Positions 3,505 to 61,454 of a DNA stretch of 64,000 bases are shown here, piece after piece. The DNA is from Podarcis muralis. Taxonomy: Eukaryota. The notes under the pieces are model-generated. The model did not search any database. It had not been told where the DNA came from and was given only the letters and a program-made list of their open reading frames with translations. A program made the translations under genes and the position numbers. The stretch lies in contig NC_135656.1 of assembly GCF_964188315.1 (NCBI RefSeq), positions 36,580,001-36,644,000 on the forward strand, read 5' to 3'. The first letter of the stretch is position 1. Every line of letters begins with the position of its first letter.

Positions 3505-4698
3505 TCCTAGGATATGATGGATATGGATTCTTCAAAGGCCCTGGGGGGGGGGTGGCTTGAATGCTGGCCAATGCTTTATGTTCCCCAGCGAACATATATG
3601 CAAATGCTATTCAGACTCCACTGAGTCTGTGCTTGTAGTGGGAAGCCAGAATTGGAGAGAAACCTTTATTGACAGATATGTCAATTCCTACTAACACGGG
3701 ATGAGCTCCCTTCCGCCACACCCCATTGAAGATCAGAGTTGTCTACTCTCCATTGCTGAGCATGTGATTTTTGTTCTATCAACTCACTAGTAGTCAGGGA
3801 AGACTTCTTCAGTGGCCATGGCTAATGGTGGCTGCTGAGGTACCATCTGCTGGGTCAACAACAGTAATGCTGTTTCGGCAGGAAGTAGCACAAGATGATG
3901 AGGTGACAGCTTCTCCTTCTTTGTTGTTGTTGTCGTCATCAGCCAAATAAAACTGAGCAGGAATGAGCAATTTGTATTGATCCCACTGGAGGGCAAGGAA
4001 AGGGCAGCAAATAGATTAGCTGGATAGATGGAGCGTAACCCACATAATCGGCACTGTTCGCCGAGGGCTCAAGTCTGCTTCATTTGGCCATTTGCAAGGG
4101 AACAGATTCATTGTTGGTATGTTTCAGTGATGCTCGGCTGTAGATTAGCACTGCATCTACAGCAGTTGCAAAATGCCAATTTTTAAAGCAGGCCTGCAAG
4201 CTGATTCACAAACATTTACAGGTGTGAATCAATGTTGCTGGCATAAAGGCCCCTCAGCCTTTGATTCACGCTTCCTCTCTGCTTTATCACAGTTACTAAA
4301 CAGGCTGATCTCTCCATGTAGTTAAAGGAATATAAAATCACTGGTGGCAAAATTCAGAAGGCTCTGAGAGCATGAATACCTCCCTTCTTCCCCCTTCCCC
4401 CACCTCATCCAAACACCCACCATAGATTAACATCCAAAATTGCTTCTTTCCTTGCTTCTACGCAAAGCTGTTATGGTAACAGGTTAGAACAGGAAGTCGA
4501 CCGAGATACAAATTATCCTCAGAAGGTAAAACTACTTTGTCAAGTAGCTCAGCTGACCAGCCACTGATTGCTGATTGTTTGCTGTGTAAATGCATGCTTC
4601 CTTTCCCTGCAAATATTTCTGAGGATTACCCTCCAGGCTCAACGTTCTCCGTTAGGGAGCATTTTGTCAAAATGGAAATGGGAGCAGAAATTGCCAGT

Positions 4699-9738: not shown

Positions 9739-10950
9739 TTTTTTTTTAAATAAATTTTTTATTAGTTTTCCAAACACATAATAAAAACAAACAATACACA
9801 ATACACAAACATACAAACATATAAACATGTATAATTTCATAATCTTATTTTCATGCACCTTGCTTCCCGGACTTCCCCATACCTCCCCTTTTCTGCATCC
9901 TTGTTTTATATTTCTTCAGCAACTCCTCCAATTAACTAATTATTCAATTCACTTTCATTTAGGTTCTTTTTTAACTTATTGATTACAGCTGCACTTCTCT
10001 ATTTCCTAATTCCTTAACATCTTAACACTCCTCAATTTTACAGCAATTTTTAAGATATATTTTAAATTTCTTCCAGTCTTCTTCCACTATCTCTTTCCCC
10101 TGGTCACGGATTCTGCCAGTCATCTCTGCCAGTCCCATGTAGTCAATCACCTTCGTCTGCCATTCTTCCAGCGTGGGTAGTTCTTGTGTCTTCCAATACT
10201 TTGCTAAAAGAATCCTTGCTGCTGTAGTAGCATACATAAAAAACGTTCTATCCTTCCTTGACACCAATTGGCCAACCATGCCCAGGAGAAAAGCCTCAGG
10301 TTTCTTAGGAAAGGTCCATTTAAGGACTTTCTTAATTTCATTATAGATCATTTCCCCAAAGGCTTTAATCTTCGGGCAGGTCCACCAAAGGTGATAAAAG
10401 GTACCTTCAGTCTCATTACATTTCCAGCATTTGTTATTGGGCAAATGGTAAATTTTTGCAAGCTTGACTGGGGTCATGTAAATCATTTTCATAATGTTTT
10501 CTCTTAAGGCATTACATGCCGTAAACTTAACACCGGTGGTCCATAACTGTTCCCAGTCAGCAAACATGATGTCATGACCGATATCTTGTGCCCATTTAAT
10601 CATGGCTGATTTCACCGTTTCATCCTGTGTATTCCATTTCAACAGCAAATTATACATTCTTGACAAATTCTTAGTATTGGGTTCTAACAATTCTGTTTCT
10701 AGTTTTGACCTCTCCATCTGGAAGCCAATTTTCCTGTCCTGTTTAAACACCTCCATTATTTGATGACAATGAAGCCAGTCTCGTACCTTAAACTTCAATT
10801 TTTCATAGCTCTGTAGTTTGATTTTTCCCTCATCTTGCTCTAAAATTTCCCAGTATTTTGGCCATTTAGACTCCATATTAAGTTTTTTCACTTCTTTGGC
10901 TTCCATTGGCGATAACCACCTGGGAGTTTTACTTTCCAGTAGATCTTTAT
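9739..10950 (-). mobile_element. 5'-truncated L1-clade LINE, 1212 bp
   Basis: Perfect 17-bp TSD ttaatggactaattcta (9722-9738, 10951-10967), short poly(A) (T run 9739-9747 on +), and an ORF2 C-terminus. Confidence 0.93.
10022..10906 (-). pseudogene. L1 ORF2 C-terminal remnant (294 aa from the first Met; the frame stays open to the truncation point)
   Basis: CCHC knuckle CWKC-x8-H-x4-C (CWKCNETEGTFYHLWWTC) and motifs HLWWTCP and AARILLAKYWK typical of vertebrate L1 ORF2 C-termini. No endonuclease or RT core. Confidence 0.88.
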
Positions 10951-22159: not shown

Positions 22160-22690
22160 TTGAAGGTGACCCGGAAACTGCAATTAATCCAGAATGTGGC
22201 AGCTAGACTGGTGACTGGGAGTGGCCGCTGGGACCACATAACACCGGTCCTGAGAGATCTGCATTGGCTCCCAGCACATTTCCGAGCACAATTCAGAGTG
22301 TTGGTGCTGACCTTTAAAGCCCTAAACGGCCTCGGTCCTGTATACCTGAAAGAGAGTCTCCACCCCCATCGTTCAGCCCGGACACTGAGGTCCAGCACCA
22401 AGGGCCTTCTGGCGGATCCCTCATTGCAAGAAGTGAGGTTACAGGGAACCAGACAGAGGGCCTTCTCGGTAGTGGCACCCGCCCTGTGGAACACCCTCCC
22501 ATCAGATGTCAAGGAAATAAGCAGCTATCTTATTTTTAAAAGACATCTGAAGGCAGCCCTGTTTAGAGAAGTTTTTAATATTTAATGCTGTATTGTTTTT
22601 AACACTCGATTGGGAGCCTCCCAGAGTGGCTGGGGAAACTCAGCCAGATGGGTGGGGTATAAATAAATTAATCATCATCATCATCATCAT
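22160..22690 (+). mobile_element. L2-clade LINE 3' end (ORF2 tail, 3' UTR, (CAT)n tail)
   Basis: Translation KLQLIQNVAARLVTG...HITPVLRDLHWLP...RAFSVVAPALWNTLP...FKRHLK is the characteristic L2 ORF2 tail. Confidence 0.9.
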
Positions 22691-23033: not shown

Positions 23034-23749
23034 GATGGTATACACACCCCTGAGGCATCTGAGTGACAAGAGGTCTACCTAAAACAAAATCTCTTACATC
23101 TTACCAGCTCATCCTTGGGCAGTGCTAGAGCTGCTGGCTCCTCATGAGGTTTACTGCCAAGGTATGTGATGCTGAAGCTGTCAGGGCTTCCTCAGCACAT
23201 CTCTAAGATGCTTTGGCAAGGCAGAACAGGGAACCGTTTTTTTAACAAACCCAAGGCTTGAAGCCAGAGTGGAAGAGGACTAGGTAGTGAGGCAGAATAC
23301 CTGCATGGAAGAATGAAATGGAATCTGGCAGTTAAATAGTTAATTATGTTTCATATTGTGGTGTATGGCATCCTGATTCCATATGGGGGAGCAACAGTGC
23401 CTTCAGGAGCAGCTGGAAATACAGAAATTAAGGAGGTGACTTCCGCCCACCCCATTTGCTTGTTTATAAAGTGATAGGGGAAAGTCACCTGCTTAATTTT
23501 TGCACATCAGGCTGCTCTTAAAGGCACTGGAGCAGAGCTCACAAATAAGTTGGCAACCCTAGCAAAACCTCTCTACCCAGGAAAAGTGACAATGTAAACA
23601 AAAACAGGGCTGTTATCCCTGGTGAGTGGAGTTCAGCTTTGTAGTGAATTGCCTTCTACATGAATCAAAATAGTTAGTGAGAAGGTTTAGCTGAATGATT
23701 CCACAAGTCTCTATTTATGATAGGATAGCCAAGATTCTTACTGATTCTT

Positions 23750-23940
23750 ACTGTTCGACAGTGGAATTTGCTGCCAAGGAGTGTGGTGGAGTCTCCTTCT
23801 TTGGAGGTCTTTAAGCAGAGGCTTGACAACCATATGTCAGGAGTGCTCTGATGGTGTTTCCTGCTTGGCAGGGGGTTGGACTCGATGGCCCTTGTGGTCT
23901 CTTCCAACTCTATGATTCTATGATTCTATGATTCTATGAT
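23750..23940 (+). mobile_element. CR1 LINE 3' end
   Basis: gtggagtctccttctttggagg...gggggttggactcgatggcc...cttccaactc followed by the (ATTCTATG)n octamer tail. Confidence 0.88.
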
Positions 23941-25379: not shown

Positions 25380-25620
25380 TACTCATTTGGACCACGCACA
25401 CCCCAAGTGCACAAAAGTGTCACTTAGCTGGATGCAGCCTGCTGGAAAGTATTACGTTATTCAAGCAATACTGCACACCCCACTATGATCCTTTTCACTA
25501 TAAAATCAATTATTGCCTTTCGACTTCACACACCTGTCTGAACGCTTTTCTGCTGCCTCCTGAGGACCACTGCAGAATGTCCTTACCATCCTTTCCTCTT
25601 GCTTTTTTGTTTGGCTGCAG

Positions 25621-25765
25621 TGATGGGTGCTCTGGAGTCCAGAGGGGTGCTGCGGAAGATGAGTGACATGCTGGAGATGATGGTGAAGAGGATGGATGTG
25701 CTAGCCAGGCTGGAGAATAGCACGGACTTCCGGAAAGGGGAGGAGACACATTTCCCTATGGACAG
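25621..25765 (+). CDS. MGAT5B: MGAT5B internal coding exon (about exon 3), 145 nt, phase 1 in / phase 2 out
   Basis: Acceptor tttggctgcag| and donor |gttagt. Encodes (V)MGALESRGVLRKMSDMLEMMVKRMDVLARLENSTDFRKGEETHFPMD(R), matching the recalled human VMGGPESRGVLRKMSDLLELMVKRMDALARLENSS. Confidence 0.95.
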
Positions 25766-27414
25766 GTTAGTAGTACCAGTAGATATGAAACATTGGCCTG
25801 AAGCATTCATTGATACAGGTTCCTCTTTTCCTGGATCCAAGAAGTGGGTGAGACCCAGATCTGCATATGGAGTTCATATGGACTTATTACTCCAGCTGTT
25901 GCATGCTCCGATTCCTCAGCTCTTTGATTCTGATGGCATATTATGGGTTCAGGAATATAGCTTAATTCAGGAGTGGTCAATTTGTGGCCCTACTGGCGTT
26001 CTTGGGCTACAACTTCCACAATCTCTTACTGTTGGCTGTTCTTGTTGGGGCTAATGGGAGCTGGAGGCAGTGGCATGTGGTGAAATTTTTCAAAGGAGAA
26101 CAGTTAGGGCCAGAGCCACCTGCTTGCGAGGGTGGGGCAGGGAGGGTCACAGAAGTGAACATCTCACCTCCCTCCTTAAACCAGACAGAAGCTTCCTGGG
26201 CTTTGGGAAGGAGGCAGGAGAGCTCTTGGACCCATTAGAGCATTGTGCCTCCCTCTCTAAGCCGGGCAGAAGCTTTCCGGGCTTTGGGAAGGAGGTTCCA
26301 GGGGAACATTTAGGGGATTAGCCTAGTCCCTCTAGTCCACTGACTGCACACCGCTGGCTAGAGGCCAATAACACCTGGAAGACCATCGATTCCCTGTCCC
26401 TGGCTTAAATTGTTAGATGGGTTGCTATTTTTTAACTGGAGAACCAGACATTACCTTCATGGTTAATGGTCCACCCTGCTTAGCAAGCAAGGTTTCAGTA
26501 TTGCTCCCTGCAAGTGATGGAGAAGGGCCAAGAGCACTGGTGAGTGGTGCAACAGCTACTGTATCATTAATGTTAATTGTAAGGTCTATTTCTCCAGTGG
26601 GCAACTCTCTTCAATAGCACTAGGTTTTCAATTGTGGGTTTTCCTATTGCCATTTAGTATTAGAGAGTGGAGGGTTTTGAGCTTCAATCACAGGCTTGAT
26701 CTTGAGCAATCCAGTTAAATAAATTATTTATCCGGGGGAATCTGATCCAAGAATCAGCAGCGGACTGTGTGGGTAGGGAGGTAAATACCCTTTAATAAGT
26801 TACTATCAAACAGCATCTCCATAAGGAATGGAATCAGAAATTCTGTAGGCACCATAAAATGACTAATTACCTCCACATAAATGATTGGTTTTAAAATAAT
26901 GACTGGAAGTGCAACTCAGTTTTTACTAAGGCTAACAACGTCAGTTAATTTGTATGATGGATTGACTGCGTGTTTTGAAATGTAGAGCTTTTAATTTGAT
27001 TTCAACTTGATCTAGCTCTTGAGAGTGTGCATGGTTAGTTTCTGATGACTGTGCAATTGTTAACAATGGAAACAACATTTTTTAAAGAACAAAAAAGTTG
27101 GGCACTGTCATGGAACAAAGTTAATATCCAAAGTAATTAACACCACAATCATCTAGTAACAAACAAACAAACTCCCTCCCCTCTCTTTCTCGCTCATTAT
27201 CCACTTCAAAGTATTTTGTGTATTCAGACAATAAATTTCCCTTGCTTACTTAGGCTGTGAACAAACAGTGGCTCCAATCTGAAGAAAGTTAGTTGGGCTG
27301 AAGTGACCTCAATAAAATTAATGGGTCTTTCTTTTTTCACAACTATCCTGTCATACTCAATTTCACTGGAATTTAAATGAAGCAAAAACCTTTCCAGGTG
27401 GGAGGTCAACAGGC

Positions 27415-38039: not shown

Positions 38040-38093
<54 letters not shown>

Positions 38094-38094: not shown

Positions 38095-38699
38095 TTACAT
38101 TAATAATAATAATTTATTCTTTTTCCAATAAAAGATTCTCAAAGCCGCTTACAAAGATGTAAAATACAAAAATGCCATAAAAACAAACAGGGAACAATGA
38201 ACAATAATCCCAGGGTCATGGGTTTGGGACTAGATGACCTGTGGCATACCTTTCAGCTCTATGTTTTTATACATAGTGCCAAAAGTGTTCCTCCACCAAC
38301 AGCACAACAAGGAGGCTTTTCCACTAGGGCTACTGGGACACAGCCCTCCCAATAAGAATGTTAGGCAATTTTTAACCACCCATCCCAAAAAACCCCACCC
38401 TCAAAGCCACATACTCTTTCCTGTCCCCCACACTTTTTACACTTCCATGAACTGAAAGAGGCTTGTAGAGACATTTCTGTCAAACTCTGGGTTCTCTGGC
38501 CAATCAGCTCTCTACAGATCTGTAGAGAGGCGCTTAAAAGCAGCCACTCTTAATATTCAAAAGTCTGCTGAGAGACCTATGGGGAGGGATCTCTTTGCCT
38601 TAGTCATACTCTTGGATTACGTGAGTGACTTAATTTCTATATGAGATGTATGGAGTGAAAATCATGTCAGAAAATCACACTTGTTCCCTCTTATAGGAA

Positions 38700-59519: not shown

Positions 59520-59645
59520 ACAGTGCTCTTCCCGCTTGAGATGGTGAGATTCAACTCCCATCATCCCTGACTATTGGCCATAGTGGCTGGGCTGATGGGA
59601 GTTGGAGTCCAGCAGCATCTGGAGGGCACCAGCTTGAGGAAGGCC
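59520..59645. mobile_element. Old palindromic hAT MITE
   Basis: tcaactcccatcatccctgactattggcca...gctgatgggagttggagtccagcagcatctggaggg. Confidence 0.55.
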
Positions 59646-59913
59646 TCCCTATGGGGTAGCTGCAACCATAGCCCTAATGTGTCAATTAGTGCTGTGCTGA
59701 ACCTTCTCAGAGATTTAATGTTGATCATTTGAAGGAGGAGGGTGAGGGCAAAATGAAGATACCCCCCCCAAAAAAAGGTAGGGTGGGTAGAACTTCATTA
59801 GTTTCAAGGGACCAGATTTGTTGAGGTGGATGAGTAGATTGTACTTTTCTTACATGAGGTGGCCAGGGTGTGTCTCTTTTCAGATCAAACATTTTTGGAA
59901 AGCCCTAAATTCA

Positions 59914-59965
59914 GGGAAAGAAGACCTTGTTGAGCTTGACTCTAGTCTAGAGACATGAGAGGTGT
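59914..59965 (+). rRNA. Non-functional 28S rRNA fragment (start of domain V)
   Basis: gggaaagaagaccttgttgagcttgactctagtct matches the recalled vertebrate 28S at 34/35. After a 10-nt gap (GGCACGGTGA), agagacatgagaggtgt matches 17/17. Confidence 0.9.
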
Positions 59966-60247
59966 TGTGGACTCTCCTTCTTTGGAGGCTTTTAAGCAGA
60001 GGTTGGATGGCCATCTGTCATGGATGCTTTAGCTGAGATTCCTGCATTGCAGGGGGTTGGACTAGAGCAGTGTTTCCCAACCTTGTGCCTCCAGCTGTTT
60101 TTGGACTACAATTCCCATCATCCCTTGCCACTGGTCTTGCTAGTCAGGGATGATGGGAGTTGTAGTTCAAAAACAGCTGGAGGCACAAGGTTGGGAAACA
60201 CTGGACTAGAGGACCCTTGGGGTCCCTTCCAACTCGACAATTCTATG
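59962..60247 (+). mobile_element. CR1 LINE 3' end, interrupted by a MITE
   Basis: gtggactctccttctttggagg...gggggttggactaga...ggtcccttccaactc...attctatga, homologous to 23750-23940. Confidence 0.88.
60068..60203. mobile_element. Palindromic hAT MITE, 136 bp, nested in CR1
   Basis: Perfect TIR cagtgtttcccaaccttgtgcctccagctg and perfect 8-bp TSD gactagag (60060-60067, 60204-60211). Confidence 0.93.
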
Positions 60248-61454
60248 AAATATTCACTGAGAGAGTGAGGATGCACACCTTCTTTGTGTGAAGTCTGAGC
60301 AACTAGGTTGCCCTGCCTTGCATGATTCATGGACTAATGTAGCATTTATATCTCTGTTAATTATTCATATGCAACAAAATGCAAAGGAAGCACCAATGGA
60401 TTTATTGTCTTGCTTGTTTTTAATCTCAAGCGTTATCTCTGCCCTGGGGAACAAGCAAAGTGTTGTAACCTGATGCTGGTTTTGAGTACCACATTCTGCT
60501 TAGAGCAGCACATTGTCTTGACTTGAACACATCTCGGGCATTTGATTGGCCGGTGCAATTGTGTGCAGCTCTGTATCTGCACCGACCCGTTTAGCTTAAC
60601 AGTAAGATTAACATGAAGTCATTCCCCGCACTGCACCCCTTCAGCTGTTATTTCAGCCTGCATGCCCCTCAACCAGCTACTTGACAAAACAAATTAACTG
60701 CCAGATTAACAAGACACAACCGTTGCATTACTCAGATTGTCCCAGCTACATAGCGGTCATTTTCTCCCATCCTCTTCCATGGCGGGGTTAAATTTTAAGT
60801 GTAATTTAATTGCTGGAGGCAGTAATTCGATCTCCTGTCTGGATGATTGGTGTGTTTTACATATCGGGAGTGGAGGGCTGTCTCCTGAGTGGCTTCGTTT
60901 GTGTAGTTAAGTTTGGAAGAGGCTGGCACCAGCAATTACGGAGGATGATAGATCTACATGGAGAACTGGAAGCCTGGGCTATTGCCTTGCATGCAAAATC
61001 ACCTTGTGAGAGAACCTCACTAAATTTTTTTCTCTTTAGCACAGATATCAGCCTTTCTGAACCCGGTGGCCTCCATAAGTTTTTGACCACAACCTCCATC
61101 AGTGGAGTCATTTCCAGAATATCAGGAGGGAGGCTAGCTCTGCTTTTCTAGGGGAAAGAATACATGTGTTAGCTTTGCTCTGTGAGGCAAAACCACTGCA
61201 GATAAGGATCAGGCATTTTCTACACTTATCAGCAAGCTTGCTTTTGTTCTGGCAAATTTCATCTGAAGTGCTGTGATATTATTTATTTCCTCCACAACCT
61301 GTGCTGATCAGTGATAACAGACCTCAGTGATAAGCAAAATAAGCTTTGTGAGATCTAAGCTAACGGATAAAATGTAAGCTCCTTGACAGGATCTCCTATC
61401 CATTTTTAGATAAAAGCTTTAGATGAGTTCTCTGGGTAATAAAAATTCTATTCT

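What the first reader, a model, noticed from the sequence alone, without database searches (positions are those of the whole stretch)
59905..60260. 28S rRNA-CR1 chimeric retro-insertion, later hit by a hAT MITE
Seen: 52 nt of 28S rRNA (34/35 plus 17/17 around a 10-nt deletion) joins in the same orientation, without spacer, to a 5'-truncated CR1 3' end. The junction gtgt is shared by the 28S and by the window's other CR1 copy (23781). attca occurs on both outer flanks. The MITE inside has a perfect 8-bp TSD, giving three datable layers. Established: LINE reverse transcriptases switch templates to cellular RNAs (U6-L1, 5S-L1 chimeras), and 28S-derived SINEs (SINE28) exist in mammals. I know of no described 28S-CR1 family in squamates. 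Inference: either a one-off microhomology-aided template switch by CR1, or a member of an undescribed 28S-headed, CR1-tailed SINE family.
Basis: partly seen in the sequence, partly recalled or inferred. Interest (0 to 1): 0.75.

Follow-up and report, generated by a model that had tools for sequence, protein, structure and literature searches.

The report
Ribosomal RNA piece fused to CR1
A lizard jumping gene (CR1) was inserted with a 52-base piece of large-subunit ribosomal RNA fused to its front, most likely because its copying enzyme hopped between RNAs; this kind of accident is known, but not yet reported for this partner and host, and nothing shows it became a family.

Summary
At 59914-59965 lie 52 nt of eukaryotic LSU (28S) rRNA. 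Against the Rfam consensus they match 34/35, then 14/17 across a 10-nt gap. They join without spacer and in the same orientation to a 5'-truncated CR1 3' end. That end holds the last 22 ORF2 codons, a two-hairpin 3' UTR and one ATTCTATG octamer. Similarity to the window's other CR1 tail starts exactly at the shared GTGT. A 136-bp palindromic MITE with a perfect 8-bp TSD later split the CR1 hairpin.

The best reading is one target-primed reverse transcription event. CR1 reverse transcriptase switched from CR1 RNA to 28S rRNA at a 4-nt microhomology.

Metagenome scans were blank. The window holds one copy.

28S/LINE-1 chimeras were catalogued in primates in 2026, and CR1 template switching has been proposed for bird SINEs. 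I found no paper on 28S-CR1 in squamates. This scan's unchecked notes list other chimeras in this genome (L1-18S, EIF2S3-CR1) but no second 28S-CR1.

Verdict: a new member of a known kind, of modest interest.

The parts
59907..59913 (+). Possible 5' copy of the target-site duplication (AAATTCA; exact 5-mer ATTCA at 59909-59913)
   Evidence: Read directly. The 5-mer recurs at 60252-60256. My estimate of the chance of such a match is about 2%, so the evidence is weak. The Rfam alignment already starts at 59912, so the last two bases may belong to the rRNA piece.
59914..59965 (+). 28S (LSU) rRNA-derived fragment of 52 nt, with a clean 10-nt internal deletion between 59948 and 59949
   Evidence: Rfam LSU_rRNA_eukarya, model positions from 2398, E 0.005. 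The match to the consensus is 34/35 then 14/17 around the gap. The stretch is unique in the window, with 0 of 100 shuffles matching.
59962..59965 (+). GTGT junction microhomology, shared by the 28S sequence and the CR1 ORF2 sequence
   Evidence: The blastn alignment to the other CR1 copy begins here (query 58 = 59962 aligned to 23781). GTGT is also the end of the 28S match.
59964..60032 (+). Last 22 codons of CR1 ORF2 plus the stop codon (VVDSPSLEAFKQRLDGHLSWML*)
   Evidence: Translated. It parallels the tail ...RSVVESPSLEVFKQRLDNHMSGVL* of the copy at 23744-23851.
60033..60067 (+). CR1 3' UTR, first part: the small hairpin and the 5' arm of the large hairpin (the putative reverse-transcriptase binding site)
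   Evidence: Folds. The same two-hairpin layout is seen in the copy at 23851-23925.
60060..60067 (.). Left copy of the 8-bp TSD of the MITE (GACTAGAG)
   Evidence: identical 8/8 to 60204-60211.
60068..60203 (.). 136-bp palindromic MITE, hAT-like by its 8-bp TSD, inserted into the CR1 hairpin
   Evidence: 36-bp perfect TIR and arms of about 58 bp. Folding energy -117.1 kcal/mol, z -18.2. Rfam mir-5408-like on both strands at 55.5 and 47.6 bits, below the gathering score of 90.
60204..60211 (.). Right copy of the 8-bp TSD of the MITE (GACTAGAG)
60212..60247 (+). CR1 3' UTR, second part: the 3' arm of the large hairpin and one terminal ATTCTATG octamer (60240-60247)
   Evidence: The octamer fits the AUUCURUG motif described for amniote CR1 (PMC5729268).
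60248..60256 (+). Possible 3' copy of the target-site duplication (AAATATTCA)
   Evidence: Read directly. It matches the 5' copy apart from a 2-nt indel.
23744..23925 (+). The window's other 5'-truncated CR1 3' end, used as the comparison copy (a different subfamily)
   Evidence: 74.8% identity over 143 nt, with ATTCTATG repeated about three and a half times at its end.

Best explanation
This is one chimeric retro-insertion made by the CR1 machinery. Target-primed reverse transcription began on a CR1 RNA at its 3' octamer and hairpin. It copied about 185 nt: the 3' UTR and the last 22 ORF2 codons. The reverse transcriptase then left the CR1 RNA at ...GUGU. The nascent cDNA end re-annealed to the same four bases in a 28S rRNA molecule or fragment. 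Synthesis went on for about 52 nt of rRNA before the cDNA was joined to the upstream target end.

The 10-nt gap inside the rRNA part is either a second short jump on the same template or a later deletion. Afterwards a hAT-like MITE inserted into the CR1 hairpin.

Shown: the parts, their order and orientation, the exact breakpoint and the MITE layer. Inferred: the template switch, the single-event origin and the one-off status.
For: -
- CR1 similarity begins exactly at the GTGT that also ends the rRNA match. There is no spacer and no A-tract.
- A junction overlap of 4 nt or more is expected by chance in about 0.4% of blunt joins (my estimate). This favours annealing-guided switching.
- The CR1 3' terminus is complete. 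It has two hairpins and an ATTCTATG octamer, as in the other copy and as described for amniote CR1 (PMC5729268). So the insertion could start by normal TPRT.
- CR1 recognises its own 3' end, which is given as the reason it does not retrocopy other RNAs (PMC5470649). A cellular RNA can therefore ride along only at the 5' side of a CR1 tail, and that is the layout seen here.
- There are precedents. 18 sense-biased 28S/LINE-1 chimeras of 50-482 nt are catalogued (PMC13174262). CR1-RT template switching has been proposed for PittSINE. SINEU heads are attributed to template switching (PMC4494074). Double jumps are reported in Magnaporthe (PMC2104539).
- A short direct repeat flanks the whole chimera.
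- Only one copy is present in 64 kb.
Against:
- The TSD is weak.
- The CR1 sequence at the breakpoint is inferred from a copy that is only 75% identical, so the 4-nt overlap rests on a conserved Ser-Val-Val codon stretch, not on the true source element.
- The 10-nt deletion has no microhomology and does not correspond to a skipped hairpin in the Rfam structure line, so it needs a separate event.
- Copy number in the genome is unknown.
Confidence: 0.6

Rival explanations
1. It is a member of an undescribed non-autonomous family with a 28S head and a CR1 tail. One route would be a truncated CR1 copy sitting inside an rDNA unit, co-transcribed with 28S rRNA and then re-mobilised by CR1 in trans.
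For: - The tail carries everything CR1 is thought to need: the hairpins and the octamer.
- The 10-nt deletion could be a diagnostic mark of the family.
- Kojima used a shared internal deletion as an argument that SINEU-3 is a true family.
- rRNA-derived SINEs exist: SINE28.
Against: - There is one copy in the window.
- No exact junction or deletion 24-mer was found in metagenome contigs, though lizard DNA is hardly expected there.
- This scan's notes on 732 windows of the genome list no second 28S piece.
- The internal 52-nt rRNA piece has no known promoter.
- The primate 28S/L1 chimeras are reported as separate insertion loci, not as a family.
Confidence: 0.09
2. The two RNAs were ligated before reverse transcription. 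A cleaved 28S fragment was joined to a 5'-OH CR1 RNA fragment, as has been proposed for U6/L1 chimeras. Ordinary CR1 TPRT then copied the ligated RNA.
For: - Law & Burns name RNA ligation alongside template switching for sense-oriented 28S/L1 chimeras, and they note 28S-derived small RNAs as possible sources.
- The final layout would be the same.
Against: Ligation needs no homology, yet the junction shows a 4-nt overlap at exactly the point where both similarities end. The chance of that is roughly 0.4%.
Confidence: 0.12
3. There were two independent events: an rRNA retropseudogene or a fragment captured at a break, and an unrelated CR1 insertion that landed exactly beside it, in either order.
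For: - Tailless 5'-truncated 28S retropseudogenes exist in mammals (PMC5322556).
- According to the same paper, lizards have several active LINE systems.
Against: - It requires base-exact abutment in the same orientation with an overlap, and no A-tail or TSD of its own around the 52-nt piece.
- The probability of an exact landing is of the order of one over the local target size.
Confidence: 0.06
4. It is an assembly artefact: a mis-join of rDNA-derived and repeat reads.
For: No read evidence could be obtained for the junction.
Against: - The piece carries a deletion and a substitution not expected of true rDNA.
- It lies inside otherwise ordinary unique sequence.
- Contigs of 18 runs from 5 studies hold 54-88% of the sampled words of the 1.6-kb stretch around it. 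That figure is not specific to the junction.
Confidence: 0.03

Closest known systems
[quoted passage not shown]
   Same: - A fragment of 28S rRNA sits directly 5' of a 5'-truncated LINE 3' part, mostly in sense orientation.
- The fragment size is within their range of 50-482 nt.
- The proposed mechanism is template switching or RNA ligation during TPRT.
- By my own estimate of numbering (untested), this piece lies inside their frequently used region 3636-4115.
   Different: - The LINE is CR1, which is the stringent type recognised through a hairpin and an octamer, not the poly(A) of L1.
- The host is a lizard.
- The fragment is at the short end of their range and carries an internal 10-nt deletion.
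- The TSD is short and weak, not the 9-19 bp TSDs they report for the tRNA/LINE-1 chimeras they checked.
U6/L1 and other snRNA/5S-L1 chimeric retrogenes (Buzdin-type, as cited in PMC4494074 and PMC4476161)
   Same: The cellular RNA is at the 5' side and the LINE 3' end at the 3' side, made in one insertion.
   Different: Those usually carry the full-length small RNA, whereas here it is an internal piece of a long rRNA. The LINE clade also differs.
CR1-tailed SINEs born by template switching (TguSINE1/PittSINE in passerines, PMC5729268); SINEU of crocodilians (PMC4494074), for head acquisition only
   Same: - The passerine SINEs have a CR1-derived tail with a hairpin and an AUUCURUG microsatellite.
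- In all of them the head was acquired from a cellular RNA by a proposed template switch.
   Different: - Those are proven multi-copy families whose heads (tRNA, snRNA) carry or borrow promoters.
- Here there is a single known copy with a promoterless rRNA piece.
- No LINE partner was found for the SINEU-1 tail.
SINE28 (Longo et al. 2015, PMC4994717)
   Same: It is a mobile sequence derived from 28S rRNA.
   Different: SINE28 derives from the 3' end of 28S, is transcribed by Pol III and occurs in mammals (I take its mobilisation by L1 from memory). This piece is internal (Rfam model 2398-2460 of 3401) and is fused to CR1.

Membership tests
LINE template-switch chimeric retrocopy | A cellular-RNA copy lies 5' of a 5'-truncated LINE 3' end, in the same orientation | tested here: met
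   the rRNA piece at 59914-59965 and the CR1 tail from 59962, both on the + strand.
LINE template-switch chimeric retrocopy | Direct fusion without a spacer or poly(A), often with short junction homology | tested here: met
   The GTGT overlap at 59962-59965 is the end of the Rfam match and the start of the CR1 alignment.
LINE template-switch chimeric retrocopy | An intact LINE 3' terminus, so that TPRT could start on the LINE RNA | tested here: met
   The restored UTR folds into two hairpins followed by ATTCTATG. The motif is as described in PMC5729268.
LINE template-switch chimeric retrocopy | One pair of target-site duplications around the whole chimera | tested here: inconclusive
   Only ATTCA is exact, extendable to AAAT..TCA with an indel. 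The chance of this is about 2% on my estimate. In the literature I read, direct repeats at such insertions are qualified by 'if present', so CR1 need not leave a clear TSD.
LINE template-switch chimeric retrocopy | Both parts arrive together (an orthologous empty site lacks both) | not testable with these tools
Look-ups of flanking ORFs found no contigs.
SINE family (28S head, CR1 tail) | Many copies at different loci sharing the same head-tail junction | not testable with these tools
   There is one copy in the window. Metagenome scans were blank but uninformative. No lizard genome can be searched here.
SINE family (28S head, CR1 tail) | A promoter of its own, or a defined transcribed master copy | not tested
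   I saw no A/B boxes by eye in the 52-nt head. No expression data were obtained.
SINE28 | [quoted passage not shown] | tested here: not met
   The Rfam match is to model positions 2398-2460 of 3401. SINE28 is from the 3' end.
CR1 LINE 3' end | An ORF2 C-terminus followed by a short UTR with a hairpin and an ATTCTRTG microsatellite | tested here: met
   the motif is from PMC5729268. No RT domain is present in either copy, so the clade assignment rests on the tail alone.
hAT-type MITE | Terminal inverted repeats and an 8-bp TSD | tested here: met
   A 36-bp perfect TIR and an 8/8 TSD.
hAT-type MITE | Ends matching those of an autonomous hAT transposon | not tested
   The only support is my recollection that CAGTG... 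ends resemble hAT-Charlie elements. No transposon library is available here.

The most novel reading that the evidence does not exclude
The locus is one copy of an undescribed squamate retroposon family whose head is an internal, 10-nt-deleted piece of 28S rRNA and whose tail is a CR1 3' end. It might be seeded by a CR1 fragment lodged in an rDNA unit and transcribed with it by Pol I. That would be an rRNA-headed SINE driven by a stringent-type LINE.
Probability: 0.08. Interest if true: 0.6.

Novelty: new member of a known kind. Interest (0 to 1): 0.3.

Why it matters
CR1 is thought to recognise only its own 3' end, which is the usual explanation for the scarcity of retrocopies of cellular RNAs where CR1 dominates. 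Chimeras like this one show the remaining route by which cellular RNA can still be written into such genomes: a template switch after initiation on CR1 RNA. They also record at base resolution where the enzyme switched. Template switching is the same step proposed for the birth of the CR1-tailed passerine SINE PittSINE. One locus adds an example from a new LINE clade and host to the 28S/L1 catalogue of 2026. A genome-wide count of such junctions would give the switching rate and preferred sites of CR1 reverse transcriptase. As a single copy it has no evident effect on the host.

Tried and rejected
- **Read laying.** I laid four runs on 59700-60420 to measure copy number across the junction and to look for empty alleles. 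Two local calls on the window spanned them by reference only: the ORF listing without translations and the repeat finder.
- **Metagenome scans.** Exact 24-mer scans for the junction and for the deletion point gave 0 hits.
- **Flanking ORFs as anchors.** I used flanking and overlapping chance ORFs to fetch the locus from other assemblies. None is on record.
- **Vertebrate 28S reference.** I did not scan collections for 28S itself, because hits could be human contamination.
- **Pfam on three larger ORFs** of the window found no family, so I could not confirm a host-gene exon to fetch orthologous introns. I dropped the route through a full-length host protein, because the gene probably exceeds the 100-kb limit and the protein searches are costly.
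- **Rejected readings.** I rejected hairpin skipping as the cause of the 10-nt deletion: the deleted bases lie on the 5' strands of two long-range helices in the Rfam structure line. I rejected R2/R4-type rDNA targeting or 5' transduction: the rRNA abuts an internal CR1 position, not an element end.

Full report
**What is there**

Reading 59600-60600 gives the following order on the + strand:
- unique flank;
- a 52-nt rRNA-like piece (59914-59965);
- a CR1 3' end in two parts (59962-60067 and 60212-60247), split by a 136-bp palindromic element (60068-60203) that is bounded by the 8-bp repeat GACTAGAG;
- flank.

**The rRNA piece**

A whole-region Rfam search did not list it. A search of 59880-60000 matched LSU_rRNA_eukarya from model position 2398 of 3401 (19.2 bits, E 0.005). 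From that alignment, 59914-59948 agree with the consensus at 34 of 35 positions. If 10 consensus positions are skipped, 59949-59965 agree at 14 of 17, and the three differences fall on positions the model writes in lower case.

I estimate the chance of such a second block next to the first at below 1e-4. My memory of that sequence agrees, but no tool gave me a vertebrate reference and a paper search for the continuation found nothing.

The 46-nt stretch across the deletion occurs once in the window and in none of 100 shuffles. The deleted bases lie on the 5' strands of two different helices in the Rfam structure line. The deletion is therefore not a skipped hairpin, and it has no microhomology.

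**The CR1 piece**

blastn of the element against the window found one relative, the 5'-truncated CR1 tail at 23781-23923 (74.8% over 143 nt). The alignment starts exactly at the GTGT of both.

In frame, 59964-60032 read VVDSPSLEAFKQRLDGHLSWML-stop. The other copy reads ...RSVVESPSLEVFKQRLDNHMSGVL-stop. With the MITE and one TSD copy removed, the UTR folds into a small and a large hairpin like the other copy, followed by one ATTCTATG. A hairpin plus an AUUCURUG microsatellite is the described hallmark of amniote CR1 tails (PMC5729268).

Upstream of GTGT the two loci share nothing, so the breakpoint is defined to within four bases.

**The MITE**

The MITE has 36 bp of perfect terminal inverted repeat and arms of about 58 bp. 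It folds at -117 kcal/mol with z -18. It resembles Rfam mir-5408 on both strands below threshold. Its 8-bp TSD is perfect. It interrupts the large CR1 hairpin, so it came later. A related, degenerate hairpin lies at 59539-59620.

**How it most likely arose**

CR1 is held to recognise its own 3' end, which is why it does not retrocopy other RNAs (PMC5470649). A cellular RNA can therefore enter only after initiation on CR1 RNA.

The layout fits a template switch. It has a complete CR1 terminus, truncation inside ORF2, a sense rRNA piece fused at the truncation point with a 4-nt overlap, and no A-tract. The cDNA ending in the complement of GUGU re-annealed to GUGU in 28S rRNA and was extended by about 52 nt.

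A blunt join would show an overlap of 4 nt or more in about 0.4% of cases (my estimate). That favours switching over prior RNA ligation, the alternative named by Law & Burns.

The deletion is either a second jump or a later loss. Double jumps have a precedent in Magnaporthe (PMC2104539).

ATTCA, or AAAT..TCA with a 2-nt indel, flanks the whole chimera. This is weak support for one event. The Rfam alignment also takes in the last two of those bases.

**What could not be tested**

Runs holding the locus exist. Contigs of 18 runs from 5 studies and a second species label hold 54-88% of the sampled words, and raw-read runs are listed as well.

Two local calls spanned them by reference only (34, 39).

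The earlier metagenome scans for the junction and for the deletion point were blank. Look-ups of flanking ORFs found no contigs.

Copy number in the genome, the orthologous empty site and read support for the junction therefore remain open.

**Comparison with what is known**

- 28S rRNA/LINE-1 chimeras: 18 loci, 50-482 nt, 83% in sense orientation. They were reported in a 2025 preprint and published in 2026.
- SINE28 comes from the 3' end of 28S, which this piece does not.
- CR1-driven template switching has been proposed for PittSINE, and template switching for the heads of SINEU.
- Four literature searches found nothing on 28S-CR1 chimeras or 28S-headed SINEs in squamates.
- Unchecked notes of this scan mention an L1-18S chimera and an EIF2S3-CR1 chimera in the same genome, which one note calls a wall lizard. 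They list no second 28S piece in 732 windows.

**Verdict**

It is a clean, base-resolved example of a known kind of accident with a new LINE partner and host. I put a single-event chimera at about 0.85 and a template-switch one-off at about 0.6. The family reading stays possible at under 0.1 and is easy to test with a genome BLAST.

Noticed in passing
window 59539-59620: A second, degenerate hairpin element sits 290 bp upstream. It is related to the core of the MITE (81% over 26-37 nt; Rfam mir-5408-like at 34.7 bits, below threshold). The locus has therefore been hit at least twice by this MITE group.
   Followed up: partly
window 23744-23925: A 5'-truncated CR1 3' end of another subfamily, with about 3.5 ATTCTATG octamers at its end and a short direct repeat (gattcttact twice) at its 5' border.
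   Followed up: partly
window 10022-10906 (- strand): A 294-aa ORF with a Cys/His-rich motif near its end. It looks to me like an L1 ORF2 C-terminus. Pfam gave no hit.
   Followed up: partly
window 22160-22585 (+ strand): A 141-aa ORF (…LHWLP…FKALNGLGP.YL…) that looks like the C-terminal part of a LINE ORF2. Pfam gave no hit.
   Followed up: partly
window 25599-26054 (+ strand): A 151-aa ORF whose first part might be a host-gene exon. Pfam gave no hit, so this is unconfirmed. If it is an exon, the chimera lies in an intron in sense orientation.
   Followed up: partly
window 38223-38262: A short stretch resembling a LINE tail (…GGGACTAGATGACC…), preceded by an A-rich region and a (CA)n run at 38080. 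It is too degenerate to classify.
   Followed up: no
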